A DNA stretch of 64,000 nucleotides, taken from assembly GCF_000150275.1 (NCBI RefSeq), contig NW_002060952.1, positions 1,672,313-1,736,312 on the forward strand, read 5' to 3'. This document shows, piece by piece, positions 1,359 to 62,648 of the stretch. The position numbers and the translations under genes were made by a program. Source of the stretch: Trichoplax adhaerens. Taxonomy: Eukaryota; Animalia; Placozoa. A model generated the notes under the pieces. It was given only the letters and a program-made list of their open reading frames with translations, did no database searches and had not been told where the DNA came from. Within the stretch, counting starts at the first letter, position 1. Every line of letters begins with the position of its first letter.

Positions 1359-1748
1359 ATGATTTTTGGTTTAATCATAACCTCAAGCGCTATTTTATAA
1401 GCCAGACAAAGCTTTCATTCCATGCAGCTTTAAATTATTGCCAAGGTGTATATGGCGGTGATCTGGTAGAGATTATGGATCCATCAGAAAATGCAGTAAT
1501 TTTAAAGATGGTAATTTCACTACATACAAATACCTCCATTTACTGGATTGGTCTGAATGACACATCTGGAACATTTCTTCATGCATCATGGATTAGTAGC
1601 AATCATGCTATCGGTAACTGGATTCCTTGGGTGCCTAACTTCGTAGTTGATACAACAAAATTATGCGCTGGAAGCATACCAACACCATCTACATTAAATT
1701 GGCTTAATTTAAATTGCTCCGATCAGCACTTTTTCATTTGTCAGCTAG
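1359..1748 (+). CDS. Gene A exon: C-type lectin domain 1
   Basis: A..YC..YGGDLVEI...YWIGL...C...W..LNC...FICQ; AG/GT boundaries, phase 1-1. Confidence 0.88.
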
Positions 1749-4700
1749 GTAATTTTGTCTTGTTATTCATGATATTGTTTTACTTCGTAATTATATTTTC
1801 TATTATACACAAATTTCAAGTATTGCAGTAAAGAAAGCTGTAATCAGATAAATTAACGGTCATTATCTGAGTAGAACGTAAGTATCATTTCTTCCGCTAA
1901 TGCTATTTGATTTTCTTCAATTTTCCAATTATACACTCGTTCGTGACCATACTAGCAGAATCAGTCTTAATCGTTATTTCCGTAGCTACCAGTAATATGT
2001 GGGACTCTCCTCAAGTTTTTATTTTATATTTTTTACGTTTGTTTGCCATGAGCACATAAGTATATGCCAGACATATTTTTTCAGCTAAAACGATTAATTA
2101 GCTACATTATTCCTTATCGTATTTGCTAAAAAATATCCGCAATACATCTTATACATAGATTTAAGCACTCCCAACGATTTGTCCAATTCTACGTTTGCAT
2201 CCTATATTATGTGGGGCTATCCATTACCTCCAGGTTTGTGAAATATATCACTTTAATAGCTGGATTTTTCATTTTATTAACATTGATTTAAAGGTCTCAG
2301 GTATTTCGACTTCTTGGCTGGAAAATATTCAATTTTTTCTTTTCAGATGAGAATACTTGCAAACCACCCGATTCTAGATTTAGCAATACCTGCTTCAGCT
2401 TTCATAAGCATTTGCTTACATGGTCATTATCCAGGGATTATTGTGCCCTTGCTGGAAAGCAATTAGTTCAATTTGAATCAATGGAGAAATTGCAAGCAAT
2501 AAAATCACTTATAACTTTCCATACTGAAACATGGATAGGATTAATAAGCACTATAGGATATCCAGTGCAAACAGATGATTTTTCCTGGATATTTCGAGAT
2601 CCCTATAATCCTTATCCAACATTTTCTAACTGGGAAAAATTCGTTCCTGTCGACATATATAATCCCCAAACTGGTCTATGTGTAACCATGAAAAGTGATT
2701 CCTTGAAATGGAATAACAGAAGATGCACATCTCTGTATCCATTCATTTGTCAACAAGGTAAGTCAAATTCCAAAATTGATTACAAATATCCCGTACGCAT
2801 ATGTTCCAGTATACTGCACTAATCAATGATAAAGCAATATTAGGAAATATGACATGAAATATTCAATTTATCTAGAATTGGCATGCCCTACTGGCTGGAG
2901 ACAATTTGAAGGAAAATGCTATATGATCGTTGATACAGCATATTCTTCTTGGCAAGACGCGTTTGCTCATTGCCAGCAATATAGTAGCGGTTTAGCTATT
3001 ATAAGAAACAAAAATGAACTGAAACTTATCGAAAACTTTACTCTATCAGTCAACAAGTCCATATGGATAGCTTTAAAAGCAAATCGTAGTAGTTTGCAAT
3101 GGATCGATAGGCATACTCTATTTATTGATAGGATCCCAAGTCTACTAGAACTGTGCCTTGTGGGTTGTATTGTTAATGGAAATATTTCCTGGCGTCTAGA
3201 GGAATGTTATTTTGCTTATAATTATTACCCATTATGTCAAAAAGGTAACGAGGGACTAATTAAATGGTAACAACTAAATGGATAGAGGACTTACTAGTTT
3301 ACATACTTGTAAATTAATTATCATTTTCTTTTATTTCTTTTCGTAAGCGGCAAAGACAATACCCGCTCCTATTCCCCAGGTAAAGCAAGTAACAGTGCAT
3401 TTTGTTTTAACATATTGCTGTAAGGTTTGAACTGAGTTTTAGTGATTGCAAGAGTGCACATTTTAAGCGATTGTTCGAAAATGGGTTAAGTAGATAATTG
3501 CTGATGCTCGATGCTAATTCTAACATGAGACAATGGATACACGCTTTCGACGTTATCTTTCAAAATAAATTTAATAAAATTGAATGAAGATAATGTTCAT
3601 ACAAGTCAAAACCACTTGGTATTTGATTTAAATCGATGCTTATTATAGCATTAGGTAATGAATTACATCCTTGCGATATTTTCTTCAGCAAAAACAAAAT
3701 TTCATTAGACTAAGATGAAAAAAATATTCGTACAGATGAATACCACTTAATTTTCTGGATTTAAGTTTTTTGCCACTGTATCTCTGTATTAACAATCATT
3801 TTAAGTCAAAGTAATTTACATTCTTCTTGAATCTAGGCGCTGCAGAATTTGACAGCTGATAATATCACCGAATCCATCGGGAAATATTATTTTCGTAAGA
3901 TAAATAGCACCAGTTTTATTCCTTACTCTAAAGTAACCTGTAACTATAAAGCGTCTTATTTTCATGCACTGTTTCACTGAAAATATATTTTCTCGAATCA
4001 TATTACAGCTACATGTCCTTACAATTGGATGTACCACAATAAGCATTGCTACCGCCTGACTACTACCATTGGTACCTATTCACAAGGAGAAACTGAATGT
4101 CATAAAGGTATATTAGCCTATCCGGCTATTATGAGCATGATTGAAACTGAATTAGTTGTCAGCTCATTGCTGCACGACGGAAATGAAGCTTGGATAGGAT
4201 TGCAATTTCAGTCAAACACTTTTAAATGGTATGGAAATAAAGCAGCTTATAATTATAGCAACTGGGATCTTAGCCAACCTAATTTATTACAAGAACAAAA
4301 CTGTGCCGTTTTAAAGAGAACCGGTGCAGATTCAGCTTACTGGTACCGCCGGCAGTGTAATTCCACATCTGCCACTCTATGCGAAAAAGGTAAAGCAAAA
4401 AATTATCATTCCAAATTTTAAAGTAAAGCGTAAATATATCAATAATAAGCCTTTGTAGATCCTATGAGTAGCCTGTAGAAAGCAAACAGTTCCAATATTT
4501 TATGGCATTGGTCGATTTCGGTCTAAAATGCTAAATTTTAACGGTTATACATTTTGTACGATATAATACCTAAAAAAAATCAGTTTTCGTGGATTTTAAT
4601 TTCAACGGTTATCCATCCTGTGCGATACAGAAGCCAAAAAAGTCTTTTATGGATATATTAATTTATTACAGCCATATTTCACTTATCAATTGTATCTAGC

Positions 4701-7700
4701 ATCAATTCTATCTATAGTGAAGTGCTTTATGTGAATAGTTTAACCATAACGTTAGCCGGATAAAATTTTAGATTGTCTATTCGATTTATTTGAACAAAAT
4801 TCTTCAAGTATTATTGAGATGCCATTAAGATCAAAAGCGTGTTAGAGTTTAAAAATTCTTTCCATATATTTTATACGTAACCGGATTTAGCTGCCACTGG
4901 AACAACCAATGAATTAATCATGTATAGTGATATTTTCCGTAAGTTTCGATAAAATATACGGTAGAGTACTGAAAAATTTGTATTGATCAAGTAAGCTATC
5001 CCATCAAACCGGCATTACCTGCAAATCTAGTCGGAACGCTATCTTGCTTACATACTCTGTTGGCTAGAAGCGTCAGTTTTTACTTTTTCTATTTTTGATC
5101 ATTCTAAGGCTGACTATTTACTTTTATGTAGGTACTGTTCATCTCTATTGCCCAAAATACTGGACTCTCAATGGCTCTAGTTGTGTTAAAGTAACCTATC
5201 TGTCCATGAGTTTCTATGAAGCACGTGGATTATGTGGCTATCATCGATCAGATCTGATTACGCTAGCCTCTGCGTCTACGGAAAATTTTATCCTAGATTT
5301 TTTATCAGATAAAGCTAGCCGTAATTCGCTCGGATTATCTGATCAATCATTTTGGATTGGTTTATATAAATCGAATAACATATTTCGATGGCTGCAAGAT
5401 GTTTCTGTACTGGAAAACTATGAAAAATTGGACAATAACCCTGGTAATTACTATTATCGATGTGTTGCATTGAAGTTTAGCTCTGTGAATAAGACATGGA
5501 TTTGGGCTAGAGTGGACTGCTTGAGCCATCGAGCTTATCCGATATGCAGAAAGATCATAGGTAGTTAACTCTTTATTTTTATGAAGTAAAATAAATTTAT
5601 TTCATACATTTTATACATTCTGGATATTACCACATATGGAGGTTCTGTATATGAGTACTTAATGATACCTAATTGACAAGTATGGTATACAAGTATGTAG
5701 ATACCGAGCTAATCCTATATGCAAAGAGATAATTATTTAATACCAGTGGGAATCAACTCTTCACTGCCATGAACCTAAATGAATTTATTTTGTACGTTTA
5801 ATACACTCTGTGTAAAATTCTGGATTTAGTGGCATAAGGAGGTTATTCACGAAAATGCTTAATGATGATTAACTCATAAGTATGGTATTTGATATTATGA
5901 TTTTCTTTATTCCCAATGCTATTAACTGTTTAGGCTCGCCAGCACAGCTAGCTGCAACAAGTTCATTAGCCGCATCAACTTCTAAATTTTTCTCTTCTTA
6001 TTCCAATACTATAAACGATTATTATGCTGATTCCTACTCCCTAAATGCAAAGTTTGATGCTATGATAGATAATTATGATTATAGTGACTATGGCTACGAT
6101 GACTATGATGATGTGGTTGATAATACTGGACTCTATCTAGCACAAGCGTTAAAGCCAAATCAGAGTTCTATCCTAGTCTCCTATTACAATAAAAGATTAG
6201 GTAAAATTTTCAGGAATTTGCCCAACATTCGCCAGTCCAAGAGGAGACTTAATAAAATGTTCTGTTCAATTAAACTGTTCACATAGGTATAAACTACGCC
6301 CTTATGAATGCTAATATAGAAAGGCTTTCTGATGACGATATTTACGTTGATATGAGAAGTAAACTGCAAGATGCGCCTTTTATGGATGACTTTGATTACC
6401 CTTTGAGTGTTAATGTTCCTACATCAGCAATATCCAAGGAATTAAATGGTTAATATAAACTTGAATAAATGTACACTTTTCCCTTCATAACAACTAGTAG
6501 TAACTAGCACTAAACGATTTTGCTACTGATACAAATTATCTTTATTCAGGAAAATTCCGCATGGCGGTGGGAATATATGAGACTAGATCGAATCAGAAGG
6601 CAAATAGGTAATTTACTGTGACTATTTAAATGCTATGTGTAGTCCATGGAGATTACTTATGCTCTACTTCCAATTTAAAATTGCTTTCAGAGAATGATGA
6701 TAAACTTGGCATTTTGATCACGGTTTTTACATACCTATACAATTTCTACGGCAATTGCATATTTAGTGATAGATTCAAGCACAGTTTCTTGAAGCAGAAT
6801 TCAAAAATTAAATTTACATTTCCTCCTTAAAATAATAATAAATCTATAGTAATACTAGCTTTTACGATTCATTTTCCAATAGTTATTTTAGTATTATGAT
6901 AACTTATACGTGTACTAGTACTAGTTAAAATATAAACAGGATTGAGATAGTGTTAATATGAACATTTACATTTAGCTTTTGATAATGCATTTTCTTTTGT
7001 AACTCAAACAAGTTTTATTACGTTTTTAGCTTACAACAGCAGCCATTAAAGTATACTATTTCATGCAGTATCCGACCTCTCATGAAAGGAAAGCTTAAGA
7101 ATCCCGTTGTTTTCAATTTTAAAATTAATCAGGTAATGAAATTGTAGAAATGTACTGCCGTTCTATTATGGTGGTATAGTAACTTTTATTGGCAGGTCTT
7201 TTTGTGAATTTGCTTAAATTAAAATTTAGCGGATAATTTAGTAGATTAAGGAAATAAATTTTAAAACAATATAAAATATTTCTGTTTATAAATTTTTACG
7301 GAAAATTTAAAGAAGGTGGTTTTACCATATTTATACTATCGGAGCTTTTTATCCGATCTTCTTAAAATAATTAGCGGTAATACTTTGCAAAAGGTGATCA
7401 AATATACATTGAACACAACAGTCTCACATAATCAGTTAATGTCTAAGGGAATAGCTTCCTAATTTATTTATTCATCTTAGCGTAGCACACTATTCGAGCT
7501 TGTACTTAAAACAGTAAACATGAAATAACGATCATATCAGTCGAAAAACTAATACAGTTATAGCATAATTATCAATATTAAATAATTTAAATTAAACACT
7601 TTAGCCTTTATAGAATAACTTCTTCAAGAATTTATTTCCTATTGTATTAATGTGATTATCATTTTAGAATGATAATGCAAAACCAACATGTGCCTACTGG

Positions 7701-10382
7701 AAAAAGAGGTAATACTAAGCGTGAATAGATATTATGAGAAAATTGGAAGAATACATAAATTTTAGGATTCATAGATTAATAAACGTACCATATCGACATA
7801 TTTCGCTGTAAAGATCATTAAAGATCTTTGTTTATAAATCATTTCTAGTTTTTGGGCAACCGATGGATTAGAAATGAAAATACCTAATGAGACAATCGTG
7901 CAGTGTCTATCTTATCATTTAACCAGTTTCTCTGTTCTGTTACAATTTAATAACTTTACGGTAAGTCCAAGGTATGAGTAGGAGTAGATAGAGAGCTAAA
8001 TATAACTTAAGTATGCATAGGTGATTAAATAATCATATTATCATGCATTTGAGATCCCAATATTCCATCAGAAAATTTTAAGTATGATGACCTACACTGG
8101 TTTATCAATGTCTTTGATCTGTCTTATGGTTACATTTATCACCTTCACTGCTTTTGGGTAAGCTAAAATTACCCTGATTTTAAAACTAATATTTAAATCT
8201 AGTTCGTATACCATGAACTAAGTATGTTTAGTCTGATGTTATGCTTAATATAATATATTTGAAAGGCGATTTCACAGCATACGTGGTCTTGTACATGCCA
8301 ACTTGTCAGCATCAATGATTATTTCCACCATTATATTTATTATTGGTATTCAGTGGACAGAGCATCGGGTAATAGTTTATAAATAGGATCATCTGATTAA
8401 AAAAATACTTTATCTAATCGTATTTTTACTTTGTATAACTTTAATGAATAGTAAAAAACAATTTTAGATTCATTTATAGTCTTAGAGCTTCGGTTTATTA
8501 TTTTATTATATAGAAAACAACGTGTATGGTTTCATCCATGATCGAGTAATTTCGCTTAATCAAACACCAGAATTGAGTTTTAATGATTTCTAACTTTTCC
8601 ATTACCATACTATTAAATCATGATTCGCGATAAAATGCAATTGAGTAAACTGCCTAGCCATCTAAAATAAAATCAGACATATAAAAGCTATAAAAAGCAA
8701 TATTGCTAATAAGTAACAATTTAATAAACTATTTTTAATAAAAAAGTAGGTTTCGCTATGTGGTCTGTCCTTAATTCGAAAATTCCATTGAATTAGCAAC
8801 GCAATAATGATTTTAGTAAAACTAACAGTAAATCAATATAATGCTTTCGTATTTGTTGCAGATATTATGCCAGTTTATAGCAATTATCCTTCAATTTTCG
8901 CTTCTGGCATCTTTCACTTGGATGTTAATTGAAGGCATAGTAACATTTAAAATGTCCGTCAACTGGCTAGAAAAACAATCTTCCGTAGTTGCCTACATAA
9001 TGATTGGATGGGGTCTGTAGCAAAAATACTAGATTTATTCGATATATTCATTAAATATACATGATCATATTTATCATCAATTTATGTTTTGTTAGGTATA
9101 CCATGTGTTATTGTTCTGAGCACTTTTCTTACTAAAAGCGAGTATTATGGGTCATCGAAATAGTACGCTTCAATCAGAGTTTTAGAACGATAAATGATAT
9201 GATTTCAATGACAATATATAGATTATTTTTGATTAAAGTCGGAGTGATATTGACCGTAATATACATATTTATTTTATTATTAATTTACTATGGTCATGCA
9301 AAAAATTAGTTGCTGGATTGAACCTGGCAATCATCTATTCTTGATTTTTGGAATTCCTGTTCTGGTCATTATAGGTGTAAGTTGAGAGTACGTTAGGATA
9401 ATTTATGAATTATTGTTCTCATCAAGACTAAAACACGCGCGTAATTTTATCACCTTGAAAAATCGTTCTGACTAGATGAACCTAATCCTAATGGCCCTAA
9501 TTACTAAATCGTTAATTGGAATTCGTGCTGTTGCTAACATGTCTAACTTACAGAAAGTTAGGTAAATGAATTAATGGAAAATTAAATTTATAACTATATT
9601 TAGATTCATTCTATTGCTACTAAATAATATTAGCAAAATATTTTTATTAGACAGAAAATTAGCCGTATTTATATATAAAATTAGAATTGATTAGTGTCTG
9701 ATAGTTTTAAAACTTTATACTTTTGCTAAACATAGAGTATCATTTCGTGCCTCTGTCGCTTTGGTACCCTTACTAGGAATTACTTGGACCTTGGGCTTTC
9801 TATCATTGAATAACACCACACTTGTATTTTCTTATCTGTTTGTAATCTTAAATTCCTTACAGGTAAGCTTGTAAATACCTTAAAAAGCAGTATTACCGCA
9901 TTATAAAGTCATTAGTAGTTTTTGCTTGTTTATTTCTTATTTCAAACATTCGTTTGATAAATAAGTTTGATTTATTTACTTATTTGATGTAGGGTGTTTC
10001 CTTATTTTACTTTCACTGCTATAATTACAAGGGAGTAAGTAAAAGAATTTATGACTTAATATATCACATGCTTATAAAACCTAGCTTTCATGTACCAATT
10101 GCTGTATTTTTTATATTGTGATACGTTTACGTTTCTTACGAAATTCATAGGTTAAAAAATTTTATCTGAGTTGGTTTAAGCTAAGTAAATTTCCAACATC
10201 TTCCGTAAAGGTTTCAGATACCGCTAGTAGAGGAAATTTTAAGGTAATGTTTGAGCTTTAAGGCATGTAACTCTAGTTGCAGATATGCATTTATTTCCCA
10301 ATACAGAAATATTAGACTACTTTCTTAAGACAAGCTATGAATCTTTAATTTCTAGCGAGCAAAATCTGCGTGGTCAAATTAA
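1359..10382 (+). CDS. Gene A: adhesion GPCR with 5 C-type lectin domains + GAIN/GPS + 7TM (signal-peptide exon not found)
   Basis: Phase-consistent exons: 1359-1748 (CTLD1), 2159-2233, 2347-2757 (CTLD2), 2876-3244 (CTLD3), 3348-3379, 3837-3894, 4009-4389 (CTLD4), 4891-4938, 5132-5560 (CTLD5), 5934-6200, 6287-6448, 6550-6607, 7030-7132, 7668-7708 (CAYW), 7849-7960 (WATDG..CLSYHL|TSFSVLL), 8054-8157 (TM1), 8266-8368 (VHANL, TM2), 8862-9012 (WMLIEG..GWG), 9096-9162, 9310-9376 (CW), 9476-9561, 9736-9862 (LLGITW..NSLQ), 9993-10034 (G..FHC), 10151-10243, 10356-10382 (RAKSAWSN*). AATAAA follows at about 10398. Confidence 0.9.
2347..2757 (+). CDS. Gene A exon: C-type lectin domain 2
   Basis: W..SRDYC..L...WIGL...CV.M...WNNRRC...PFICQ. 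Confidence 0.9.
2876..3244 (+). CDS. Gene A exon: C-type lectin domain 3
   Basis: CPTGWRQFEGKCY...W.DA..HC...WIAL...C...W...C...PLCQK. Confidence 0.9.
4009..4389 (+). CDS. Gene A exon: C-type lectin domain 4
   Basis: CPYNW..HNKHCY...WIGL...NW..SQPN...NCAVL...WYRRQC...LCEK. Confidence 0.9.
5132..5560 (+). CDS. Gene A exon: C-type lectin domain 5
   Basis: CPKYWTLNGSSC...FYEARGLC...FWIGL...CVAL...W.RVDC...PICRK. Confidence 0.9.
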
Positions 10383-13674: not shown

Positions 13675-13696
13675 ATATATATATATATATATATAT
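13675..13696. repeat. (TA)n microsatellite
   Basis: About 11 uninterrupted TA units. Confidence 0.9.
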
Positions 13697-14089
13697 ACAT
13701 AAGATCGCTTAACACCTCATTACGAAAGTGCCTACTTATAATTACAATCCCTTTTTAAACTAGCGAAATGTGGTAACTATTTAAAGTCAGATTTATTTAC
13801 ATTGGAGAATCCTGCAAATTTACTGGTTTATTTATTGTGCTTAATGATTTTTGGTTTATCCCATTGCTATTCATAAATCATAATTGGTCATAGAGTGCAA
13901 TCCAGTAAACTATCTAGTTATACAAAAATTAAATTTAGACGTATAAAAGCTATAGACAGCAATTATGCTAATGAATAAATAGATTTAATTAATAACATTT
14001 TTTCATATTAACAAAGTCCGATTCACTGTACGGTGTGTCTTACATTCGAAAACTGCTTTCAACAAGCAGTACAAACATGGTTCGAGCCA

Positions 14090-15140
14090 AACTATCAGTA
14101 TTTCAATGTGTCGTCTTCGTAATTGTTGCTGACTTTATACCAGTGTTAAGCAATTATTCTTCAATTTTCGCCTGTGGTATCTGCTACTTGGCTTTTAATA
14201 AGAGGCTTAGTAACATTCACAATATCCGCCAGCTGGCTAGAAAAGCGATCTTGCATAGTTGCCTCATTGATGATTGGATGGACTTAACAGTGCAAATACT
14301 AGATTTATTCAATATACAAATTAAATGTTATCACATTTATTATCAATTTTTATTTCGTTAGGTATACCATGTGCTATTTTGCCGAGCACTTCTTTGGCTG
14401 AAAATGATTATGGCCATACCAAGGTATCAGTTGCTGGTTTAAACTTGTTCTTAAGAACAAAGTTATGAGGCAAGGAGATAGTATAAAATGGGTATTCTTT
14501 ATCTCATCGATCTACCAAAACTACTTCATAACTTGATATAAAATGGAATTTCTGTTCTAGTTTTTATCTCTGCACTGATATAATCGGTACTAGTCTGCCT
14601 CTTATCCTTCGGACAATATTTTGATCAATAAATTTATTATTCTACTATACTGTTAGCTATTTAGCTTAACTCAGCACCATACATCGAATCTGCTACTCAA
14701 ATCACATTTTATTTATGGCAATCCTCTTTACAGTATCGAGATTGTTTTTAATCGTTTGATAAATAAATTAATAGTTTTAGCAACAATAACTCTATAGCAC
14801 CTCCGAAAATCTGTTAATAAACAAAGTAATTGTATATTAATTAATATTTTTCAACAGTCACAACAGTACATATTCATAATCATTAATATAATTATGCACA
14901 GTATACTTTTATAAATTAATTAGTAAATTTTACGCTTTGAGTTCGCTATTATCACACCTGGTAACTATCTATTCCCGACTATGGAATTCCTGTTACAGTT
15001 ATTATAAGTGTAAGTTGGAAGTATATTGGTATAACTACTAAATTATTATTATTATCCGGACTAAAATATGGGGATAATTTTATCACTTTACTAATTGAAA
15101 TAACTATATAAATCCAATCTTAATGATCCTAGCATTTCAA
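14090..15140 (+). pseudogene. Degenerate partial duplicate of gene A TM3-TM5 exons with their introns
   Basis: 14125-14420 aligns to 8855-9160, including the intron (AAATACTAGATTTATTC...GTTAG|GTATACCATGTG). 14940-15130 aligns to 9310-9500 (GGAATTCCTGTT...GTGTAAGTT). The acceptor is mutated (TTGCAG to TTGCTG), motifs are eroded and indels are present. Confidence 0.8.
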
Positions 15141-42461: not shown

Positions 42462-45400
42462 CTTAGCTTGTCTCATTCCGACTAATACGGTAAAGCTTGA
42501 TAGATGTTCAGTTTCACAGTAAACCGATGATGTATTGCTGACTTTCGTTTTAACACCTTGAGTCGACCAGTGGCCGGTATTATTGCTACTATAGATATGA
42601 AATTGGCATGGATATGAGAACCACGAAATCGATAAAGAAAGAAATATATTATTTGGCTTTACCTTGCTTTCCAATATACGCATTGGATGTTACTGTTTTT
42701 CTATCGGGTAGAATAAGTAAGCCATATTAGATATTATTTAATTAAAATCTTGCTGTTGATAATTTCAATCCAACTATCAGCTGGACTTATATCCACCTGA
42801 TAACTCTGCCAAGCTAAATGTAGTTGATTTTAAATGCACTCATCAACTGTAGCGATATCAATCTAATGTATTAGCCGTAATTGTTTCAGGTAGTTATAAA
42901 ATATGCTTGTACTTATTGCCTATAACATTATATTGATATACTAGCTATAGTTATCAACTATTCTAATAATTAGTTCAGTTTATAATATACCTCATCCTCT
43001 GTAATATCGAAAACAAGGTGAACAGGTTTAGGAAATTGTTCCGTAATGGTTGGGTAGACATTTAAAGAAACGATTGAATGGTTTAATGCGGTGCCATTAG
43101 CACTATGTAAGAGCAAAATGTAACTTAATATTAGCTTGGTTTAAATAACTGCCTTAAGTAATAAGACTTATGATATAGGAAAGCTTTTAAAGCATCCACT
43201 ATAGCAGTTAGGAGTCTTATTTTGTCATATAGAGTATGATAGCTAAAGGAAGTTGCTGTTCTTACGTAAAATTTCTTTCAGTAGGCTGAAAGGCAATGGA
43301 AACAATTCCAACATAACCTACAGTAAAAGTAAAGCATAAATACTGAAATTCATGGAAGGTATAATCAACAAAGACGTCATCAGCGCTATGTATTAACTAC
43401 AGATCGACAAACTACACCATATTTCACCTTTATATTCTTTAGGAACAATAGCTTTGGGGATTTCTATATGTCGGATCGTGCTTCGAGATAGGTAATTATT
43501 TGCGGAAGTCATATTAATCTTAATTGAGCCAGATTTATCCTCTACAACTTCGGATTTGGATACAATATAAAGTTCTATGAGACAGAAAAATAATGATGTT
43601 TTATTGCATCCCAAATATTAGAATTCTAGTATAGCATATATATACAATAACAAATAATTTGCTGTCAAAATCAGCAAATGATCTTACTAGCAGTTTGACT
43701 AAAAGCAGATGAAGAAATTGGAGATTGAATGGATGCTAAATTCTGCGCCAAAGCAGAGCCAATAGTCTCGCTAGCATTTAATGCTGCACTGGTGCTCTTA
43801 TTTAAATGTTGGAAAAAAAGTTTTAAATTTACTTAATTTATAAGCAGTATATGACATGCCAAAGAAATCTATCAAATTGAATAATTTAAGGTAATACTTA
43901 CCACGTTATAGATATTAGTTTTAGTCAAATTTTGAGTTAAATCCTTATAATTATCTGATGGATAGGAATCATTTAGATCTAAAAAAAGTAATAATCGGAC
44001 CATAGATCAGCTAACATTAGCTTATCTACATACGTTGAACTTAAGTAGATCGATTAAAACTCAAAATGAGGGCAAACTGTTTACTTTTCATGCATAAAAA
44101 TGATGAAAATTTGCCAAGGCAATCTAAAGAGTGCCATTTCCAGTCGACGCCGTTTGGACCAACATTTCGTTTAAGAACAGCACAGTTTCGATCTGGCAAA
44201 GGATGACCTGCAGCCCAATTGAAATATGTGGTTTCTCTGCCATTAACCACCCATTTAAATGGGCTATTATCAACTGATGTATCACGATATAATCCAATCC
44301 AAGTCCACATTAGCCATTCTTTACCGAGAAATTGATCAATTTGCTGCTGAGTATTCATGGAATCGATGACTCCCAAATCTGCTCCATAGTATTGGCAGAT
44401 AGATCTTGCATGGATAAACCATTCTGGGTTGAAGAATCGTCGAAAACAGAGATTACCATGTTGTGTCCAGTTTCCAGGGCAATTTTTATTGACTGTACCT
44501 AAATGAAAAATTCGTAAGTAATACGATTTTATTGTTTGAATCTTTTATTTATTACTTAAAAGCATGATTGTGTCAAAATACTCGGCTAGTAGTTATACCC
44601 TCTTGTGCTGGAGCCATCATTCTGTTAAAAGAACTTCTAATGCCTAGTGAAAAATTTAAAATCAAGGTTAAAATTTTAAGGATTAAATAAAAGATTATCC
44701 AATATCGCTGTGTGTAAGAGTTTAATGTTGAAAAACGATGATAAGGCTATTTAAAATAATTTGACACCAGCAAAATCAATCATACATCTGTATCCATATA
44801 TTCGTAGCTAAGTAGGATTTAAGATTACGATAATTAAACCTAATTAAGCATGAAAGGTGAAGATCTAAAGTTAGAATTACATATCGGATAGAAAAAATAA
44901 GATAATTTTACATTGTTGTGATCGGATGTTTTCGCTAATCAAGTAAGGTATGTTTAATATTTCTACCATTAGATTAAAATTGTTGCAAATTCGAAGCTTG
45001 AATTAGGTTAATTCGTTTATTTATCTTCTATTAGCAATATTATAACTCTGCCTTACACCGTGCTGTATATTAAGATACACGTAACATGGTTAGTGCTGGA
45101 CTATTGAAGTGATTAATGGACTAAAGTTCATTAGAGACTATCCTGTTTTTAATAGTGTCGTAAATTCATAATATTAAATCAGATAATAATATTATAAATT
45201 CGTATTGGTCTAATTCTCACTGTCTAGTTTTGTTTTCTATACATGTAATTATAGTGATTAGTGTCGAATAAAATTATAGCAATATGATACAGTAGAGTTC
45301 AGTCATTAATCAAGTATTAACGCAAACATACAATATTGAGCTAGATAATAATGTAATCAATTCGTAATGGTCTAATTCTATACGCCCAACATTGCCTTAT

Positions 45401-46697
45401 ATGCACATTATCAGAATGAATAGAGGTGAACAAAATTATAGAATAATGATGCAGTATAATTCAGTCATAAATTAAGTAAAGAAAATAATCATATTAATTA
45501 ATCTGATTAGACGATGAAGGCTTTAAGGCTAATTATACTATAAAGATGATAATGCTAGGAAAGATACCGATTACTGTAAAAACTGTTTAATAAAATTTAA
45601 AGATATGCCAATTGCTCGAATAAATATAAACTACCTGCTCCAACAATAATTAACCAAGCGAGTTTAGAAGAACATTCTAACTTGTTAATTACTTTTACAC
45701 TGCGCTAATAACCGAACACTATTTCTATCGCTACATTATCAAACTAAAACAATTTACTTGATAATAGTAAAATCTGCATTTCTAAGTTAGGATCATGATT
45801 TAGTCTGCAAATTCTAGAAGAAGAAAAATGATCGGAAATCTCTTTTACATTGAGTTAATACCATAGATTTTATTCTTACCTTTGCGTTGGCAAATAAACA
45901 AGCGTTGTTCTGAACAGTTGCCAAGTCTCCAAATGCCTGGTTGATCTACCAATTTATCCAGTACACCACATTGATCGGTAGTAATATTGCTGGGTTCATC
46001 GGCTGCCCAGTAGAATTTACCAACTGTTATATGTTTATCAGTAATCCAATGAAATCGTCCATATTGATTTCGTTGCATACCAAACCAATAAGTTTCATTT
46101 ATAGTATCATCATATAAAAGATAGTGATCGATTGCTAATCGTTGTGGATTTGTAGGAATAGTGACAAGATGGGAACTATTTTGTTCACAGAATCTTTGAG
46201 CTGAATCAAAGTCCAGTTTAATGTTCGATCTTTGGATGCATTGTCCATTTCCATAAGGTAGCCAACCTTGTGGACATTCATCTAATCAAAAATTCAACTC
46301 AATCTTGAGAATTGAATATAGATCGGATCACTTCACTATACTTAATTTAGTCTAGGTATTTATTCTAGACAAGATAGAGTAGGATATTTTTTCTGTTGCT
46401 AGTGAACTTACAGTACAAATCATCGAAATTAGCCAAGTATTTGCCAATTGCTGATGACGAGATGGATATCAAAAATAAAAGCTAGAAAATAGAGAAAATA
46501 GGATCGACTTATGAATCTATTAGCAGTGAATGAACTTCTTCGTGAATGTTAAGCAGCGTGGCGCTTATGGAATATTCCAACGAGAATAAGTTTTTAACTC
46601 AGGATTAAGTTTCTAAACGTGTACAGGTAGCAATTTTAAATTTCATGTACTTTTTTACTCTCTTTCGTTCGCTTACCGCACAATAATAGGAGGGCAT
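42462..46697 (-). CDS. Gene D N-terminal part: signal peptide, 2 CTLDs, GAIN/GPS of an adhesion GPCR
   Basis: Exons 46677-46697 + 46412-46481 (MPSYYCALLFLISISSSAIG), 45880-46281 (CTLD, WFGM..EPSN..C..W..C..FICQ), 44599-44643, ~44085-44498 (CTLD, WIGL), ~43902-43978, ~43688-43796, ~43428-43574, ~43266-43317, ~42991-43103, ~42663-42700 (CVYW), 42462-42588 (WSTQG..CETEHL|SSFTVLV). TM1-TM5a exons were not found before the gap. Confidence 0.85.
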
Positions 46698-55520: not shown

Positions 55521-58500
55521 TTATTGATTCAGGAAACTGCAAACCTTTGTTTGTGTTTTTTGGCAATAATTTTGCACTTTATAACTTAAACTCCTCTTTC
55601 TAACTCTAATAGTCGTATTTATCGTAAGTGCCACTTAAAACATGAGTTGCAATGTTAAGAATGCAATAAATTTTTATGCTTGTAGTATATTGATTGGTTT
55701 TATTCTTAAAATAACTAGCCGATGAAACTATTTGAATCTAAATATATTGTTACGAAATATTCTGGTAATAATTATTTCGTGATACATATCTGCTATTTCA
55801 ATTGTTTCGTGATCCGATTCATAATGATAGCGCAGATACTCTACTCAGTTAGCTATTTCAACCAACAATTTATTTTCGAAATCAGTCAAAAACTTACCGC
55901 TTTGTCTATTAGGCAAAAGAATGCAAACATTGTCAAGCTCTACCAACAGGAATAATTATGATTAGTTTAAGACCATATTGATAATGTTTATTACTGATTA
56001 GTAGGTCTGCCATTGTATCTCTAGTAAATTATCGAACAGTTGCAAGCTCTTCTCAGTCCAAACATACGTTAATTAATAACAGTAGATAGGAAGATTCTTA
56101 CCTGCAACATGGTTATGGTGAAAAATGGAAACAAAATGCCCATACTGGGCGTCGTAAAAGCTGCATATATGCCTAAAACCATTTTGCAAACGGATAGAAA
56201 GAATAGTCCCACGGATCCTAAAGCTTTTCTTCTGTGGAGGAAGCAATTGATGTACTTATAAAAGTTTGCTTTTGTATACAGAAATCGAGAGAAGTAATTT
56301 TAATGAAAAATAGACTGTAGTTAAATTTCGTTTATCTTTTCCATGATGAAAGCCTACTTGTGGATAGATTGACAGCTATTTTTGCTTTCATTTTCGACTC
56401 CTTCTTGAGATTCCCGGTGTGATGTTGCTTTAACATTTAAGATATTCAAGGCCATACCAATCTTGACGTAAAAATAAACATATATGACACAATCAAATGT
56501 TACTACATCGTAAATAATCCATCCTAATAAATTAATAAATAGATGCAAAGCATTATAGATTCTTGTCGAAAAGTAGCTGGATTACTCAAATTAGAAATTG
56601 AAACATACCATAAATACAATAACGAAGGCGGCAATATAAGGTCCGATAAGGAAGCTATTTTTTGAAAGCAAGCACCTGTATACAGCAAATATGATTTAGT
56701 ACTTTATTTAATTTTAACCAATTTGAATCGAATAGTAATTAAATCTGTATATTTATTCAATTTATAAAATAATTTTTAATACTATTAAATCAAAAGTTGC
56801 AAAAAACTTACAAGTAATAACCGCCAAATTGATTCCTTTCAAATATACTAGCAATTGCAGCCGTGAGTAACGCTGGAAATACTAGACGATAATAAAGATA
56901 TATGTAACAATTAAGGTTTGTTACGAATATCGCAGCTACTTCTTGGCAGGCGGTTAATAAAAATATACTACGACTTATATCTATTACATTTATATTGATA
57001 AATTTTAAAAAATATTTAACACATACCGTATCCGAGGGATAAAAAAATAAACATTATATTTCGTCCAAATTTACGTCCTTTGGTATCGACATATCTAGCT
57101 ATGCAATCAACCAATAACCAGAGAACGGCTGTTAGACCAAGACCAGACGTAAAGATACCAAATTTTTGACATATACTCTATTATTTTAAATCAATGCTAT
57201 ATTTATTAGACTCAAAGAGACCTTTATCAATGTAATTTTTAAACTATATCCTCTAAATTAAATTAAGTAAGTATTACGAAGAGGCCTAAGTAAGCTGAAG
57301 ATGTATTTAATTATATTTACAATCTCAGCTTCATTGATTTTTGGTATATGAAGTCCAATTAGAACAAAGATGATTGATAGAATTTCAGCTAAGCAGCAAT
57401 TACAGCAAATAAATCTTGTCATGGTTTTCAGCTGTCTGAGTACAATAAAAGTATACAGGTTTGTATAATAGCCCGTACATTTCTATACGCCTTAAACTAT
57501 GCTTATAGAAGAAGAATAAAATTTGATGGCTATAATTAGACAATCTACCTAAAAAAAATACCACAAAGGAATGTGATACTTAAAAGTATTATTGATATTC
57601 CTAGCTGTAATGAACCCCATAAATGATAGGTAAATTGGCTGTTAGCCTGCGATATATTGCCCGTTGTGAATGTTATATTTGGCTAAAGTGTTTAAGAAAT
57701 TAAATTCATACTAGAAATTAGCGATGAATTATACAGTTTGAACTTTCAAGTATTGTTTTGGGCACGAAATAATTTCGAAATATGATAGCAAATTACTTCC
57801 TCAGTTGCAATAGGTTTCTGCTGTATCAAAGTGATTGCATAAGAAATTTCTTGAGTTTTATTAAATTGGCATAAAACACTTCTGTCGGAACTATAACTAG
57901 TTTTTATCCCCTTATTAGACCAATATCCATCCTCAGGTTGATGAATACTATCATATGTTGGAATACAAAGAAGAATCTGCTTAGATTGATGATACATGGC
58001 ATATATCGAAAGTATTTTTGCGTACTCGCATTAATGCATAGTTGATTAAATACAATTCTGTCACAGGCATTAATAATTTAATATCGATAATATTATAGCC
58101 GATTTAAGGGCGATAAACTGCTTAAGATAGGAGAGGCTATCAATAATAGCTTTTATATCATTATTCTAATAGCTGATCAATTATACTAGTAAGTAAAAGC
58201 GTAACTGAATGAGCAAGCCAAAGAAATTCTTAAGAATTCTATCGACTGTGAGCCTTACTTTATAACGGTCTCCTTGTAAATTATTAAATTACCTCTGAAT
58301 CCAATAAGCGCACTGTTTATTTCGCACATTATCCTAAAAATAGGTTATTTAGAGAATAAACAGAGCTTAGAAAATATTCTTTATTGCTTATTTGTCATCT
58401 AATTTAAAATACTGTGCACTTCAGAGAACTATTTGCCTTTTTCGGAGCAGTTTCATGACTTACCGTATCTGTAAAAGTGACTCTGATTGGATGTATAAAT

Positions 58501-61500
58501 ATCTGATCACTTGTAGCATTAATAACCAAGAAAACAATAGGTGCCTGTCTAATAGAACTAATTTGCGTAATAAAGTCACATTGGACAATTTTAAAGTTAT
58601 TGTAATCGAAATTTAGGAGCTATAGAAGCTAATCTTATTACATATGAACTGATATTGGGTTGATGGATAATCATTGTTACGTTAAAGAAGCAATATAATA
58701 TGGATAAACGTCATTAAATTTAAATTTACGCTGAGTGGCTATTAAAACCAAATCATAATAAATTGACTGCTTAGCATAGGCAAATAAATCATGTACTGTA
58801 ATACAAATCTTATTCAAGCTATCATTTTTATATCTTATCGTAATTGGTATTTGAAGATGCAAAACGTGATTAATCTGACTATATCAGAATATATGCTAGC
58901 TTGCTAAATAATCACAATTAATGTGAACAGACCGCTGAGTGTCAACGAAAACTGAACATATCGAAAGTTATAATTTAAATTTCGCATGCATCTATACGTA
59001 TAATCTTCGTAAAATTGTAATATTTGATTTCTAGAAATTTAATACAAACAAATTTTCCCATAGTGTTACAGCTAATAGAAATTAGTTGTTGATCTAAGTA
59101 CGCTACTCTTTTATTTCATCCATTCTACGGGATGCTGCAATTACTCATACACATAGATCAAACCTTATATCCACCGGTAGATTAGTTTTGTTGACAATAA
59201 CTGCGATAACTGATATGAAACCTAAGTAATATAATTAACATAAACTATCATTACATATGCGCTACATTTAATGCCTATATTTGAGTATTTAAGAACATTG
59301 AGCAGCATTTAACTAATCATAAAATTATAAAGTGTATAATACCTTCCCGATAATTAACGTTGGTCGCAATAGGAACCTGAATTAATGGTGTTACCGTGTC
59401 AGTTGTATTCTTAATCATCAAATTAATCGTATCACTCTTGTAGTTGTTGTTAAGATGATATAGTTGATATGTTAAGATAGCATAGACACCTATCAGAAAT
59501 TATAAATAAATCCAAATTGTAAAGGATAACCTATTCTAATAAGGAAGATTAAAATTTGATCATATCATAACGAGATAATTGTGATAAATAGGTCGAAATC
59601 CGCAGAGAGCTACCTGGTAATATGATTTGAGTTTGATTATCAATAGCAAAGTTTTCAAGAGCCAGTGTCGCGCTAAATTGTTTCGTTGTATTACTGAAGC
59701 TCGAAATTAAATCATCCATTTTTTGCTAAGAAGAACATAGGAACGAAATTGTTATGTCAGAATCCGTAATGGAGATGGCATTTCCGAGTTTTGCCTGGGA
59801 ATAGCTTTTACGTCGCTTTTATGGACTACTAATAACAGATCTTCCTTAAATTATATTATACCTTAATAAAAGTAATTATAATCAGACTTTTTTTATCTCC
59901 CAATTAATTTCATTTAGCAATTTATATAATCAACAATCTTTATTGACTATAACCGTCTTGTAGATTTCTAATAGTAGTTTGAATTTCTAAATTATCTCTA
60001 CTGCGGTATTGATGATATCAAATAAACATATTATAGGTACCTGATTTTGATGATCCAAGGACGTTAATTCGGAAGTAAAAGATTGCTGTAGTGACTTAAA
60101 AGTAACTTGCTCATTGGTTAAATCTGTTTAAAAATTTTAGGGATTAGATATAGAGTAAAAGAGTAATAACCATTTAATTCTAAAAGTAGGGCTCACTTTT
60201 AGAGCAAATGAACCATGAATGGTAAGAATCACATCCATATGATCTCCATTTCCAAGTCATATTTCGTTCAACTGTTTTATGGCGATGAAGCACAGTGCAA
60301 TTGATACTTTTGCGTGGATTATTAGCATGCCAGTGAAAATAATGGCTTTCTTCTTGCGATTCCATCCACTTAAAATGATTACTTCGACTTTGATATAGAC
60401 CGAAAGAATACCAAAAATAGGATAAACCTTTTGTATTCAAATAGTGATCGACAATGTTTTGTGTTCTTCTAGAAGAAATTTCGGCAAGATCAGCCCTCGC
60501 ATACTGGCAAATTTGGCGTGCTTTGACAACTGGTAAGGCATAGTGGAAAGCTTTAACACAGTAATCTTCAGTTGGTCGATACCAGCCAGTTTGACATTTG
60601 TTATCTTAAGTATAGGCAATTAAAGTATAAAAACATAGTATAGTCAGTATGCCTTACAGCAATCATATGACAAAGATAATGCTTTGTGGATAGATGAGGA
60701 ATCAGTACCACAGATGTCAAAGGTTGCTCAAGATCAATACTGATTCTATTTGTATTTTTAACATTTAAAGCGCTAAAAGGAACTGGCATTTATATTATGA
60801 TTACTTACTGTCACAACTACGTTTACGACATAAGGAAACAACGCAGTACTTATAATACACTTTTCTGTACTTTAATCTGTAGAACTACTTCCCTAGGCTA
60901 CCATATGTATAGTATTTGAATCATTGCGAAGTATACACTAACTCACTTAACATAATATACGGTAAAAAATTCTCACATAACTTATCCTAAACCTGAACCA
61001 CTTTTATTCACGGTATAAAGTTACTGAACCTCTGACAGGTCTACGACAAATGGTAATACTATCTGTTAAATGAGCACATTATCGTAAACCGTCAGCAAAG
61101 CGACGGGAGTTTGTACTAGTATATTTCAATAACAAACATTTTATTACGATTAAATTATCAAATACGGGCATTCGATAGTAGTCCAAACTTCCAACAAGTT
61201 CAAATGAAGTCTTATCTTAAACTACATGTCTATATTTAAATTATTTTGATGACTGTGACACTTACATATATAATTCATATCTAATAATCATATAAGTGAA
61301 ACCTAGACTAAAAATAAAGTATTTAAATGTTTGGTAACGAAATAGAATTTTGGCTAGAAATTTAAGTACGTTGCTTATATCACATATTTATTCGATCGTT
61401 GGTTGACTTGTTCTTGTCTATGGTACATGGTAACTTAAGCCTAAAGCTTGAAGTGTGCAGCATGTGAATGCAGATAAATCATTTAATCCAACGCCGTGTT

Positions 61501-62648
61501 ACTTGTTATAGGTTTTATGTCGGTCCATTATCTTACGGTGTTTAAAATGCCAATACCAACAAAATCTTCATTTTTTTTCAACTATTTAACAGTATGGTAA
61601 AAACCGTAGGTCTTACGGCCGTACTTTGGCTCCACTATACTCATTTGGCGATTTCTCGTTTAACTTTGCATGGAAGTATGAGAGTTACAGAATATTAAGA
61701 CTATTTTAGATAAATTTAGATATCATATTACTAGCACTATTTTATAATTAATCTAATCGATTAGTTATTCTTCCGTAACAATGTTCACACACGAAAAGGA
61801 TGAAAATAAGATAAAAATCTTACACTAAAGTAGATATTTTAAATGTTATAGGGTTATTTTAATTTACTATGATACTTCAGAATTATATCATTTCTGAAGT
61901 CTATTTTATTAGGCCTTTCATTTTTAGTTATGAGCCAAATCTATAATTGTATATTAGTATAATTACGTAAGCTGTAACTATATATATTTATTATCAATAA
62001 GAAATGGTAGGGCAGGACTTTAGTCATACTTTTGAAATCAACTTTAGGCTAGCGAAAACATGAAGCTTACTTACCGGTTTTAAATGGTGCGTTAAGGTAA
62101 GGCACTATCTCTCGTAAAATACCTTATATTGGGGTATAATTAAGAAATAGAAATAGGTCAGATGTTACTTGAAGATCTTCGATGGAAATATCATGCAAAT
62201 GCATTAATTGAATAGCTTTGCTAACCATTGTTTTGGCAAAGAAATGGTAATTCATCGCTACAGTTATGCTCTGCTAAAACCCATCTATCATGATAGAAAG
62301 AATAAGAAAGAGCAACACAAGATGGGATAGTAGAATTACTTAAAGTGTTCGGCGCCAAACTTGTCAGTACTTCAGGAGAGATGTAGGAATTCGGAGTGCT
62401 TATCCAAGAATAAAAGCTACGATGACCGCTGAAAGTAGCCTTTTTCATACCAATCCAATAAGATGGTGAATAATTTTTATCCAATAAAAAGTCTACAGTC
62501 ATCATATAATCTGTATTCCTCCGTAATTCCAGAAGCGTAGCATTATTCATTCCTTGGCAAAATCTCTCACCATTATCAAAATTCATGTACTGTTTAATTC
62601 TTAGGCCGCACGCTTCTTGGAATGGCAGCCAATCATTTTGGCAAAAGT
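55521..62648 (-). CDS. Gene E: divergent adhesion-GPCR-like protein, at least 2 CTLDs + GAIN-like region lacking the GPS cleavage site + atypical 7TM (5' end not found)
   Basis: Exons 62226-62648 (CTLD), ~62076-62122, 60197-60604 (CTLD), 60041-60123, ~59615-59725, ~59343-59489, ~59163-59221, ~58464-58548, ~58292-58333 (CAYW), 57797-57947 (WSNKG..CQFNKTQEISYAITL), ~57549-57682 (TM1), ~57321-57435, ~57027-57177, ~56812-56881, ~56609-56675, ~56358-56461, ~56102-56231, ~55898-55939, and tentative 55521-55544 (VCSFLNQ*). Intron positions and phases match gene A. Confidence 0.8.
60809..61260. mobile_element. Solo-LTR-like element, family 2 (452 bp), in an intron of gene E
   Basis: Perfect inverted termini TGTCACA...TGTGACA with perfect 5-bp TSD CTTAC (60804-60808 and 61261-61265); second copy at about 34046-34604. 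Confidence 0.82.
61089..61120 (+). mobile_element. Helitron-like 3' terminus nested in the family 2 element
   Basis: GC-rich hairpin CCGTCAGC-AAA-GCGACGG followed about 9 nt later by CTAG|T; the segment is absent from the other family 2 copy. Confidence 0.45.

What the first reader, a model, noticed from the sequence alone, without database searches (positions are those of the whole stretch)
1359..62648. Tandem cluster of multi-C-type-lectin adhesion GPCRs with variable ectodomains: a candidate diversified sensing or recognition receptor family
Seen: at least four genes plus one fragment and one pseudogene share identical GAIN-7TM intron positions. Their ectodomains differ: A has 5 CTLDs, B has 5 CTLDs plus a mucin, D has 2, and E has at least 2. 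A and B are head-to-tail on +, D and E on -, converging at 32-37 kb. Established: adhesion GPCRs couple an ectodomain to a self-cleaving GAIN domain and a tethered agonist, and CTLD arrays (as in mannose-receptor-type proteins) bind glycans or proteins. Inference: local birth-and-death expansion of a lectin-array receptor wired directly to G-protein output, e.g. for microbe, food or self recognition. The ORF track shows only isolated lectin exons, so automated annotation is likely to miss the full architecture.
Basis: partly seen in the sequence, partly recalled or inferred. Interest (0 to 1): 0.85.

Follow-up and report, generated by a model that had tools for sequence, protein, structure and literature searches.

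The report
Placozoan lectin-domain adhesion GPCR cluster
This stretch of the Trichoplax adhaerens genome holds a real, at least partly transcribed cluster of adhesion-type G-protein-coupled receptors whose outer part is a row of C-type-lectin-like domains, but the receptor family was published for placozoans in 2019, so the finding is sound and not new.

Summary
The window is Trichoplax adhaerens scaffold C1405:1672313-1736312.

- **Genes:** A and B (+ strand) each have five single-exon C-type-lectin-like domains (CTLDs), then GPS and 7tm_2. B adds a 362-aa Thr/Ser-rich repeat exon. D and E (- strand) each have two CTLDs.
- **Intron structure:** GAIN-7TM intron positions and phases match in A, B and D wherever sequence exists. 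E matches in phase, and most of its exons also match in length.
- **Transcript evidence:** spliced RNA contigs chain A's fifth CTLD exon through to its 7TM exons.
  - Public gene models already carry the architecture (TRIADDRAFT_59350 and 59352).
  - Kamm et al. 2019 described CTLD-plus-secretin/adhesion GPCRs as a placozoan speciality.
  - The "pseudogene" at 38293-41505 sits between two gaps. It differs by 0.5% in substitutions from an upstream gene, so it is probably a misplaced haplotype contig that splits gene D.
  - B's TM4-6 exons lie in a gap.
  - The cluster continues upstream with at least three more five-CTLD genes.
  - The paralogs are old (dS saturated) and under purifying selection.
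  - No CTLD has the EPN/QPD plus WND sugar-binding signature.
  - E lacks the cleavage motif.

Other windows of this scan reached the same "already published" verdict for sister arrays.

The parts
1355..10382 (+). Gene A = TRIADDRAFT_59350 (public model P0001). CTLD exons at 1355-1748, 2347-2757, 2876-3244, 4009-4389 and 5132-5560. Linker mini-exon at 4891-4938. Stalk exons at 5934-6200, 6287-6448 and 6550-6607. GAIN/GPS exons at 7030-7132, 7668-7708 and 7849-7960 (HL|T). 7TM exons run from 8072 to 10034, the tail runs to 10379, and the stop codon is 10380-10382. The 5' signal-peptide exon was not found.
   Evidence: Exact mapping of P0001 with GT/AG boundaries. Pfam hits. Spliced RNA contigs from 4938 to 10356. 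Stop codon.
13841..14428 (+). Dead fragment: a copy of A's TM3-TM4 exons (e17, intron, e18).
   Evidence: 75% DNA identity to 8580-9125. In-frame stop and no AG/GT at the e17 boundaries.
19618..32452 (+). Gene B = TRIADDRAFT_59352 (partial public model P0002). Five CTLD exons lie at 19618-25163. The Thr/Ser-rich repeat exon is 25872-26957 and a stalk exon is 27068-27217. GAIN/GPS exons are 29153-29252, 29586-29626 and 29821-29932 (HL|T). TM1-TM4 exons run 30043-30939. TM4-6 exons are lost in the gap 31017-31479. TM6-7 is 31770-31896, followed by 32013-32054 and the tail.
38293..41505 (+). Contig between two gaps that carries stalk, GAIN, GPS and TM1 exons. It is a near-identical copy of part of the upstream gene that holds TRIADDRAFT_17306. 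Probably a misplaced haplotype contig and not a pseudogene.
   Evidence: 96-98% identity to C1405:1659299-1662393. 13 substitutions and 5 indels in 2396 bp, none in the three mapped exons. It also spans the upstream copy's own gap.
37631..46285 (-). Gene D. CTLD exons at 46285-45848 and 44544-44044. Stalk/GAIN exons span 43832-42973. GPS exons are 42700-42662 and about 42573-42462 (HL|S). TM5/6 to TM7 exons are 38127-38042, 37894-37768 and 37672-37631. TM1-TM5 exons are not in the assembled sequence.
   Evidence: Pfam. Exon HMMs and projections. A repeat copy at 42354-41724 follows the GPS exon.
55898..62733 (-). Gene E, a divergent member. CTLD exons at 62733-62224 and 60605-60183. The GPS-like exon ends at 57797 and has no HL-T/S. 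7TM exons are 57646-57549, 57435-57321, 57177-57027, 56881-56812, 56675-56609, 56461-56358, 56228-56102 and 55939-55898.
   Evidence: Pfam Lectin_C; GPS only at E 0.009. Conserved exon phases and lengths. No Pfam or HMM hit for the 7TM exons. No other genome match for the TM3-4 exon.

Best explanation
The window is the downstream half of a gene cluster of about 160 kb on Trichoplax adhaerens scaffold C1405. The genes encode adhesion-class (B2) GPCRs whose extracellular region is an array of C-type-lectin-like domains.

**Two architectures**
- Five CTLDs: A, B and at least three upstream genes. The order of the five domains was fixed before the genes duplicated.
- Two CTLDs: D and E.

**Likely mechanism (inferred from family knowledge, not shown here)**
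1. The CTLD array binds a ligand. Because the sugar and calcium signature is missing, this is probably a protein or particle surface and not a classical calcium-dependent glycan.
2. A compact GAIN domain cleaves itself at HL|T (A, B) or HL|S (D).
3. Force or ligand-induced loss of the N-terminal fragment exposes the tethered agonist (TSFSVLLQF).
4. The agonist switches on the 7TM domain and G-protein or arrestin signalling.

E has lost the cleavage triad and the TM6 PLLGxTW motif. If it is functional, it must work without cleavage.

**Assembly problems**
- The plus-strand block at 38.3-41.5 kb is probably a misplaced allelic contig.
- D's TM1-5 exons and B's TM4-6 exons are hidden in gaps.
For: - **Identity:** public models are 100% identical to the exons and are named as Trichoplax adhaerens.
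- **Domains:**
- **One transcript for A:** GT..AG joints 5560>5934, 6200>6287, 6448>6550, 6607>7030, 7708>7849, 8157>8266 and onward to 10356, seen in contigs from four runs of four studies. The 7132>7668 step rests on a 16-base overhang.
- **Shared exon structure:**
- **Array older than the gene duplications:**
- **Old paralogs under constraint:** dN for CTLDs is 0.37-0.61 against 0.19-0.30 for 7TM, with dS saturated.
- **H1 versus H2 ortholog of A:** 9 substitutions in the CTLDs, 7 in stalk/GAIN and 1 in 7TM.
- **Class:** the best solved relatives are ADGRL3 (E 4.5e-49) and ADGRD1.
- **GAIN fold:** the AF2 model has 2 helices and about 12 strands at 710-909 (pLDDT 55-83), followed by 7 helices. 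The top Foldseek hit is full-length inactive CD97 with 468 columns. VIA gave Z 27.2 for model 748-1166 against chain 298-802.
- **Cluster extent:**
- **Haplotig reading:**
- **Family published:** PMC6321704.
Against: - No ligand, cleavage or G-protein coupling was tested.
- RNA support exists only for gene A, and only as short contigs chained across runs, not single molecules.
- One low-depth contig uses an out-of-frame donor at 7971.
- The AF2 model is poor overall (mean pLDDT 48), and Pfam's GAIN model does not hit the Trichoplax proteins.
- B and D cannot be shown to be intact because of gaps.
- E's 7TM exons match no profile.
- The block at 38.3-41.5 kb could be a very recent real duplication.
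Confidence: 0.85

Rival explanations
1. The receptors act mainly as endocytic scavenger receptors. The CTLD array captures debris, food or microbes, and arrestin-driven internalisation matters more than G-protein output. This is the reading of Kamm et al. 2019.
For: PMC6321704 proposes this and reports 23 alpha-arrestins in Trichoplax sp. H2. The CTLD array is most similar to macrophage mannose receptor and PLA2R, which are endocytic receptors.
Against: A, B and D keep the intact cleavage triad, the tethered-agonist sequence and a strongly constrained 7TM (omega about 0.1). This argues that 7TM activation itself is under selection. The two readings are not exclusive.
Confidence: 0.3
2. They are self-adhesion or mechanosensing receptors that bind an endogenous matrix or cell-surface protein, as latrophilins and CD97 do. 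They are not non-self recognition receptors.
For: No CTLD has the EPN/QPD plus WND sugar site. Array positions are conserved as orthologous units and evolve under purifying selection, not diversifying selection. The closest solved 7TMs are ADGRL3, ADGRD1 and ADGRE5.
Against: The family is expanded into many clustered paralogs in the genome, which is more typical of environmental or immune sensing. The ectodomain changes 2 to 7 times faster than the 7TM.
Confidence: 0.3
3. The block at 38293-41505 is a true, very recent segmental duplication inserted into an intron of D. That would make D a disrupted gene and the block a young pseudogene fragment.
For: It is in the scaffold at that place. A real 93% partial tandem duplicate of the same upstream gene exists nearby, so this locus does duplicate.
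Against: Both ends are assembly gaps. Substitution divergence is only 0.5%, with no change in the three mapped exons. It also covers the gap in the upstream copy, as an allelic contig would.
Confidence: 0.2
4. The CTLD exons and the GAIN-7TM exons belong to separate neighbouring genes.
For: None for A. It remains untested for B, D and E.
Against: Spliced contigs link A's CTLD5 exon to the stalk exon and onward to the 7TM. The H2 orthologs P0026 and P0028 are annotated as single proteins. All CTLD exons are phase 1-1 and in frame with the downstream exons.
Confidence: 0.03

Closest known systems
Placozoan CTLD-bearing secretin/adhesion GPCRs (Kamm et al. 2019, BMC Genomics 20:5; 28 of 36 CTLD receptors in Trichoplax sp. 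H2)
   Same: This is the same family. Genes A and the upstream U1 have H2 orthologs at more than 90% to 100% identity (P0026, P0028), each with CTLDs, GPS and 7tm_2 in one protein.
   Different: The text I read (sections 7 and 8 and term searches) gives only domain counts and does not mention their genomic clustering. Worked out here are the C1405 cluster layout, the fixed five-position array, the shared intron phases, the GPS and Stachel state of each gene, the missing sugar-binding motifs and the assembly errors. These are details, not a new kind of system.
Vertebrate adhesion GPCRs ADGRL3 (latrophilin-3), ADGRD1 and ADGRE5 (CD97)
   Same: 7TM identity is about 30%, with E-values of 1e-31 to 1e-49. 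The last GAIN strands, the HL|T site and a TxFxVL tethered agonist are shared. Fold match is Z 27.
   Different: There are no RBL, olfactomedin, HormR, pentraxin or EGF domains. The GPS keeps only two of the four canonical cysteines. The GAIN is compact (about 160 residues, two helices). The NCBI name "ADGRL3" for the H2 proteins reflects similarity, not orthology. In the 7TM tree the Trichoplax genes form their own clade.
Mannose receptor family (MRC1, MRC2/Endo180, PLA2R)
   Same: Tandem arrays of long-form CTLDs, one after another. This is the best non-placozoan match to the ectodomain (PLA2R 7qsr E 1e-21; MRC1 22-24% identity over up to three CTLDs).
   Different: Those proteins have an N-terminal ricin-type domain and an FNII domain, 8 to 10 CTLDs and a single transmembrane helix. 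Here there are 2 or 5 CTLDs on a GAIN-7TM.
Saccoglossus kowalevskii "ADGRL4-like" (P0030)
   Same: Two CTLDs, then GAIN, GPS and 7tm_2. It is the best non-placozoan hit, with 39% identity over GPS-7TM.
   Different: Its 7TM groups with hemichordate ADGRD-like receptors that carry pentraxin or LamG heads. The lectin head was therefore probably gained independently. It does show that the CTLD-plus-aGPCR combination is not strictly unique to placozoans.

Membership tests
Adhesion GPCR (class B2) | Secretin-type seven-helix domain (7tm_2) | tested here: met
   PF00002 at E 2.9e-48 on P0001 (gene A), with exon-level hits in A, B and D. Fold Z 27 to ADGRL3 and CD97. E's exons get no profile hit and are placed only by conserved exon phases.
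Adhesion GPCR (class B2) | GPS motif directly before TM1 | tested here: met
   PF01825 is above its cut-off in A, B and D. In E it is below cut-off (16.9 bits against 22.5). Only two of the four canonical cysteines are kept in A, B and D (alignment).
Adhesion GPCR (class B2) | GAIN domain fold | tested here: inconclusive
   Pfam GAIN does not hit P0001. The AF2 model shows 2 helices and about 12 strands at 710-909 with pLDDT 55-83. Residues 748-1166 align to GAIN plus 7TM of inactive CD97 (8ikj, 381 residues, Z 27.2), but the 7TM drives that score.
Adhesion GPCR (class B2) | Cleavage triad H-L-T/S and tethered agonist TxFxVL | tested here: met
   HLTSFSVLL in A, B and the three upstream genes; HLSSFTVLV in D. 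E reads QEISYAITL at that place, so the feature is not met for E.
Adhesion GPCR (class B2) | Actual autoproteolysis and agonist-driven G-protein activation | not testable with these tools
   This needs expression, a western blot of the two receptor fragments (NTF and CTF) and second-messenger assays.
Calcium-dependent carbohydrate-binding C-type lectin | CTLD fold | tested here: met
   PF00059 is above its cut-off in all 14 window CTLD exons.
Calcium-dependent carbohydrate-binding C-type lectin | EPN or QPD motif together with WND at calcium site 2 | tested here: not met
   In the alignment of 31 CTLDs, the nearest variants are EPR, QPN, QPS, EPS and WNN. No domain has both motifs. They are therefore C-type-lectin-like domains, not shown lectins.
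Placozoan CTLD-GPCR family (Kamm 2019) | CTLD(s) and 7tm_2 in one placozoan protein | tested here: met
   P0001, P0027, P0028 and P0029 carry both. The paper is cited.
Latrophilin (ADGRL), the name given by NCBI to the H2 orthologs | RBL lectin, olfactomedin and HormR domains before the GAIN | tested here: not met
   Pfam finds only Lectin_C, UL45-like CTLD, GPS and 7tm_2.
Mannose receptor family | Ricin-type and FNII domains, 8 to 10 CTLDs, single transmembrane helix | tested here: not met
   There are no such Pfam hits. There are 2 or 5 CTLDs, and the membrane part is a 7TM.

The most novel reading that the evidence does not exclude
The C1405 cluster is a specialised multi-CTLD branch of the placozoan family. 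Its five-domain head is a rigid, position-conserved, non-sugar recognition surface for food or microbial particles. Gene E, which has lost both the cleavage site and the TM6 toggle motif, would act as a non-signalling decoy or co-receptor. An alternative donor after the GPS exon of A would release a soluble ectodomain. Together this would be a small regulated recognition system wired to G proteins in an animal without nerves or immune cells.
Probability: 0.12. Interest if true: 0.55.

Novelty: already known. Interest (0 to 1): 0.25.

Why it matters
CTLD-headed adhesion GPCRs are a placozoan speciality. They may show how a very simple animal couples surface recognition directly to G-protein or arrestin signalling. 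That idea is already in the literature.

This locus adds practical groundwork:
- an RNA-supported gene model for one five-CTLD member;
- the state of the cleavage site in each paralog;
- a warning that the reference scaffold is broken in genes B and D;
- evidence that these domains should not be assumed to bind sugars.

Tried and rejected
- **Profile searches on E's 7TM exons:** Pfam, my own exon HMMs and a whole-genome PF00002 scan all found nothing. Homology rests on exon phases alone.
- **D's TM1-5 exons:** searched for between 42462 and 38127 and not found. Only a repeat copy and the foreign contig lie there.
- **H2 ortholog of B:** sought to see the exons hidden in the gap, but none turned up in the allowed length range.
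- **The look-up of encoding contigs for P0002:** gave no record.
- **Signal-peptide exons:** found only for upstream gene U1. There is none in 1-1354 for A. A candidate for B at 18643 was not verified.
- **dN/dS between paralogs:** largely unusable because dS is saturated.
- **Other genes:** ten intergenic ORFs had no Pfam hit.
- **Papers naming these loci:** none found.
- **Ancient shared architecture with Saccoglossus:** rejected, because that 7TM groups with other hemichordate receptors.
- **Joined gene models:** no self-made spliced protein was sent to any search or folding tool. Whole-protein searches used the public models P0001 and P0002, and my own exons went in one by one by reference. 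The only joins were inside scripts, to read the frame across one junction and to sum per-exon substitution counts.
Full report
**What the window is.** A 62-residue 7TM exon of gene A was searched against 1.84 billion proteins. It found a 1195-aa protein at 96% over the query, and that protein's exons map onto the window at 100%. It is TRIADDRAFT_59350 of Trichoplax adhaerens. Gene B is TRIADDRAFT_59352. The window is scaffold C1405:1672313-1736312, plus strand.

**Checking the observation.** Pfam on single exons, given by reference, confirms the domain counts:
- five Lectin_C exons in A and five in B;
- two in D and two in E;
- GPS motifs before the first membrane exon in A, B and D, and a sub-threshold one in E;
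- 7tm_2 in exons of A, B and D.

A CTLD profile built from the window and run over 164 kb (window plus 70 kb upstream and 30 kb downstream) finds no extra CTLD near D or E. E therefore has exactly two in the assembled sequence. B's additional exon (25872-26957) is 13.8 copies of a 57-bp unit and encodes a Thr/Ser-rich stalk with many N-x-S/T sites.

Mapping P0001 exactly to the DNA gives 24 exons with GT/AG borders. All CTLD exons are phase 1-1.

I projected A's GAIN-to-TM7 exon borders onto the paralogs. They land on AG and GT with no shift in B, in three upstream genes and in the D exons that exist. E is too divergent for sequence profiles. It still offers a complete set of open, phase-compatible exons, and five of them have exactly A's length. 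That is hard to explain except by common descent.

**The gaps, tested first.**
- The gap at 10611 lies 229 bp beyond A's stop codon.
- The 463-N gap in B replaces the exons for TM4-TM6. The flanking exons end and start in phases that cannot be joined directly. The public model P0002, which jumps the gap, is therefore an artefact there.
- The gaps at 38243 and 41506 bracket a 3.2-kb contig on the opposite strand, which carries stalk, GAIN, GPS and TM1 exons. This contig is 96-98% identical to C1405:1659299-1662393, part of the upstream gene that holds TRIADDRAFT_17306.
  - Over 2396 aligned bases there are 13 substitutions and 5 indels, with none in the three mapped exons.
  - It bridges the upstream copy's own gap.
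  - True duplicates at this locus are much more diverged: 93% for a partial tandem copy, and saturated dS for the genes.
  - As a result D's TM1-TM5 exons are simply missing from the assembly. After D's GPS exon come a 630-bp repeat copy, a gap, the foreign contig and another gap. D's TM5/6-TM7 exons follow.
- The fragment at 13841-14428 is a real dead copy of A's TM3-TM4 exons.

**Is it one gene?** Contigs from four public runs of four studies were laid on 4400-10390. They show GT..AG joints that chain the fifth CTLD exon to the stalk, GAIN, GPS and all 7TM exons of A. The 7132>7668 step rests on a 16-base overhang that matches the next exon.

The joints also correct the public model. There is a 48-nt linker exon at 4891-4938, and the acceptor is at 6287, not 6320. 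Both are present in the Trichoplax sp. H2 ortholog P0026. These are short contigs, not single molecules, and only A was tested.

**Extent and history.**
- Upstream of the window lie three more five-CTLD genes: U1 (TRIADDRAFT_59344), U2 (59345) and U3. There is also a partial 93% copy of U3's first two CTLD exons, and another member near C1405:1.573-1.581 Mb.
- Of 78 CTLD exon hits in the genome, 28 lie in this stretch of about 160 kb.
- In a tree of 30 CTLDs, each of the five array positions is a clade (98-100 support). D1/E1 and D2/E2 pair (96), and D2/E2 sit weakly next to position 5. Whole genes were therefore copied after the arrays were built. The "variable ectodomains" are two fixed designs plus B's mucin insert.
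- Among the five-CTLD genes dS is 1.4 to unmeasurable. dN is about twice as high in CTLDs (0.37-0.61) as in the 7TM (0.19-0.30). Where omega can be computed it is about 0.2-0.3 against about 0.1.
- Between the H1 and H2 orthologs of A there are 9 substitutions in the CTLDs, 7 in stalk/GAIN and 1 in the 7TM.
- This is faster ectodomain evolution under constraint, not recent birth-and-death or evident positive selection.
- D's TM6-7 exon matches receptors on C1411 and C1408 (55-60%) at least as well as its neighbours (47-57%). Its CTLD2 is closest to E's, and E's TM3-4 exon matches nothing else. D and E look like an old local pair whose link to the A/B group is unresolved.

**How it probably works.** The 7TM is a clear adhesion-class domain. 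The best solved relatives are ADGRL3 and ADGRD1.

An AlphaFold model of P0001 is poor overall (mean pLDDT 48). It is usable for residues 740-1165, where it shows two helices, about twelve strands and seven membrane helices. Its best Foldseek match is full-length inactive CD97 over 468 columns, and VIA aligns model 748-1166 to CD97 298-802. I take this as moderate support for a compact GAIN domain, although Pfam's GAIN profile does not hit.

A, B and the upstream genes read C-x-S-Y-H-L-T-S-F-S-V-L-L, and D reads H-L-S-S-F-T-V-L-V. The catalytic His, the Thr/Ser nucleophile and the tethered-agonist core are therefore in place. Only two of the four GPS cysteines are kept, and the two lost ones would form one disulfide pair (my own knowledge of GAIN structures). 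E has Q-E-I at the triad and lacks the PLLGxTW motif of TM6.

None of 31 CTLDs combines EPN or QPD with WND, so calcium-dependent sugar binding should not be assumed. The steps from ligand binding through cleavage, agonist exposure and G-protein or arrestin signalling are inferred from the family. None of them is shown here.

**Comparison with what is known.** Kamm et al. 2019 (PMC6321704) report that 28 of 36 CTLD receptors of Trichoplax sp. H2 are secretin/adhesion GPCRs. They call the combination unique and propose pattern recognition coupled to GPCR signalling and endocytosis. In the text I read and term-searched, the paper does not mention clustering of these genes. No paper names these loci.

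One correction to "unique": Saccoglossus has a two-CTLD, GAIN, GPS and 7tm_2 protein, which is the best non-placozoan hit. Its 7TM groups with hemichordate ADGRD-like receptors that bear other heads, so this looks convergent.

Earlier notes of this scan on other windows reached the same verdict for sister arrays. I had already found the paper independently.

**Verdict.** The feature is real, well observed and already known as a family. The new points are local details and assembly corrections. Interest is 0.25.

Noticed in passing
window 12834-13394, 20683-21238, 34617-35014, 54577-55134 (minus strand); older copy at 12002-12489; also upstream at -8174..-7616: A dispersed repeat of about 555 bp, with copies 93-97% identical to one another. 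Two copies sit inside introns of family genes (B, and upstream gene U3). It looks like a young non-autonomous mobile element with no ORF.
   Followed up: partly
window 347-680 and 41724-42354 (minus strand); upstream -50291..-49663: A second repeat family, up to 630 bp and 90-93% identical. One copy lies directly after D's GPS exon, just before the gap.
   Followed up: partly
window 7961-7971: One low-depth RNA contig (run X7) uses a donor 11 nt downstream of the annotated one. The frame then stops after ...FNNFTVSPRKF, which gives an ectodomain without the 7TM. The same contig also keeps 30 nt of the upstream intron, so it may be unprocessed RNA.
   Followed up: partly
window 4891-4938 and 6287-6319: The public model TRIADDRAFT_59350 lacks a 48-nt linker exon and 33 nt at an acceptor. 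Both are supported by RNA joints and are present in the Trichoplax sp. H2 ortholog.
   Followed up: yes
window 5934-6200 (A) and 27068-27217 (B): The stalk exon encodes a Tyr/Asp-rich acidic run (DYYADSY...DNYDYSDYGYDDYDD) next to the GAIN domain. It could be a tyrosine-sulfation or calcium-binding patch. This was not examined.
   Followed up: no
upstream of the window, C1405:1649179-1651734 versus 1652602-1655155: A 2.56-kb tandem duplicate at 93% identity covers the first two CTLD exons of upstream gene U3. It is cut off by an 867-N gap. It is either a young partial duplicate or the start of a further gene.
   Followed up: partly
C1405:1572799-1581305: A further CTLD exon and 7tm_2 exons lie about 92-100 kb upstream of the window. 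The cluster may therefore hold at least eight genes.
   Followed up: no
P0030 (Saccoglossus kowalevskii): A hemichordate protein with two CTLDs, GAIN, GPS and 7tm_2 qualifies the published statement that CTLD-only heads on GPCRs are unique to placozoans.
   Followed up: partly
C1405:1665927-1672312, directly before the window: 6386 N run right up to the window's first base. I cannot tell whether this is a real gap or withheld sequence. The missing first exon of gene A may lie there.
   Followed up: no
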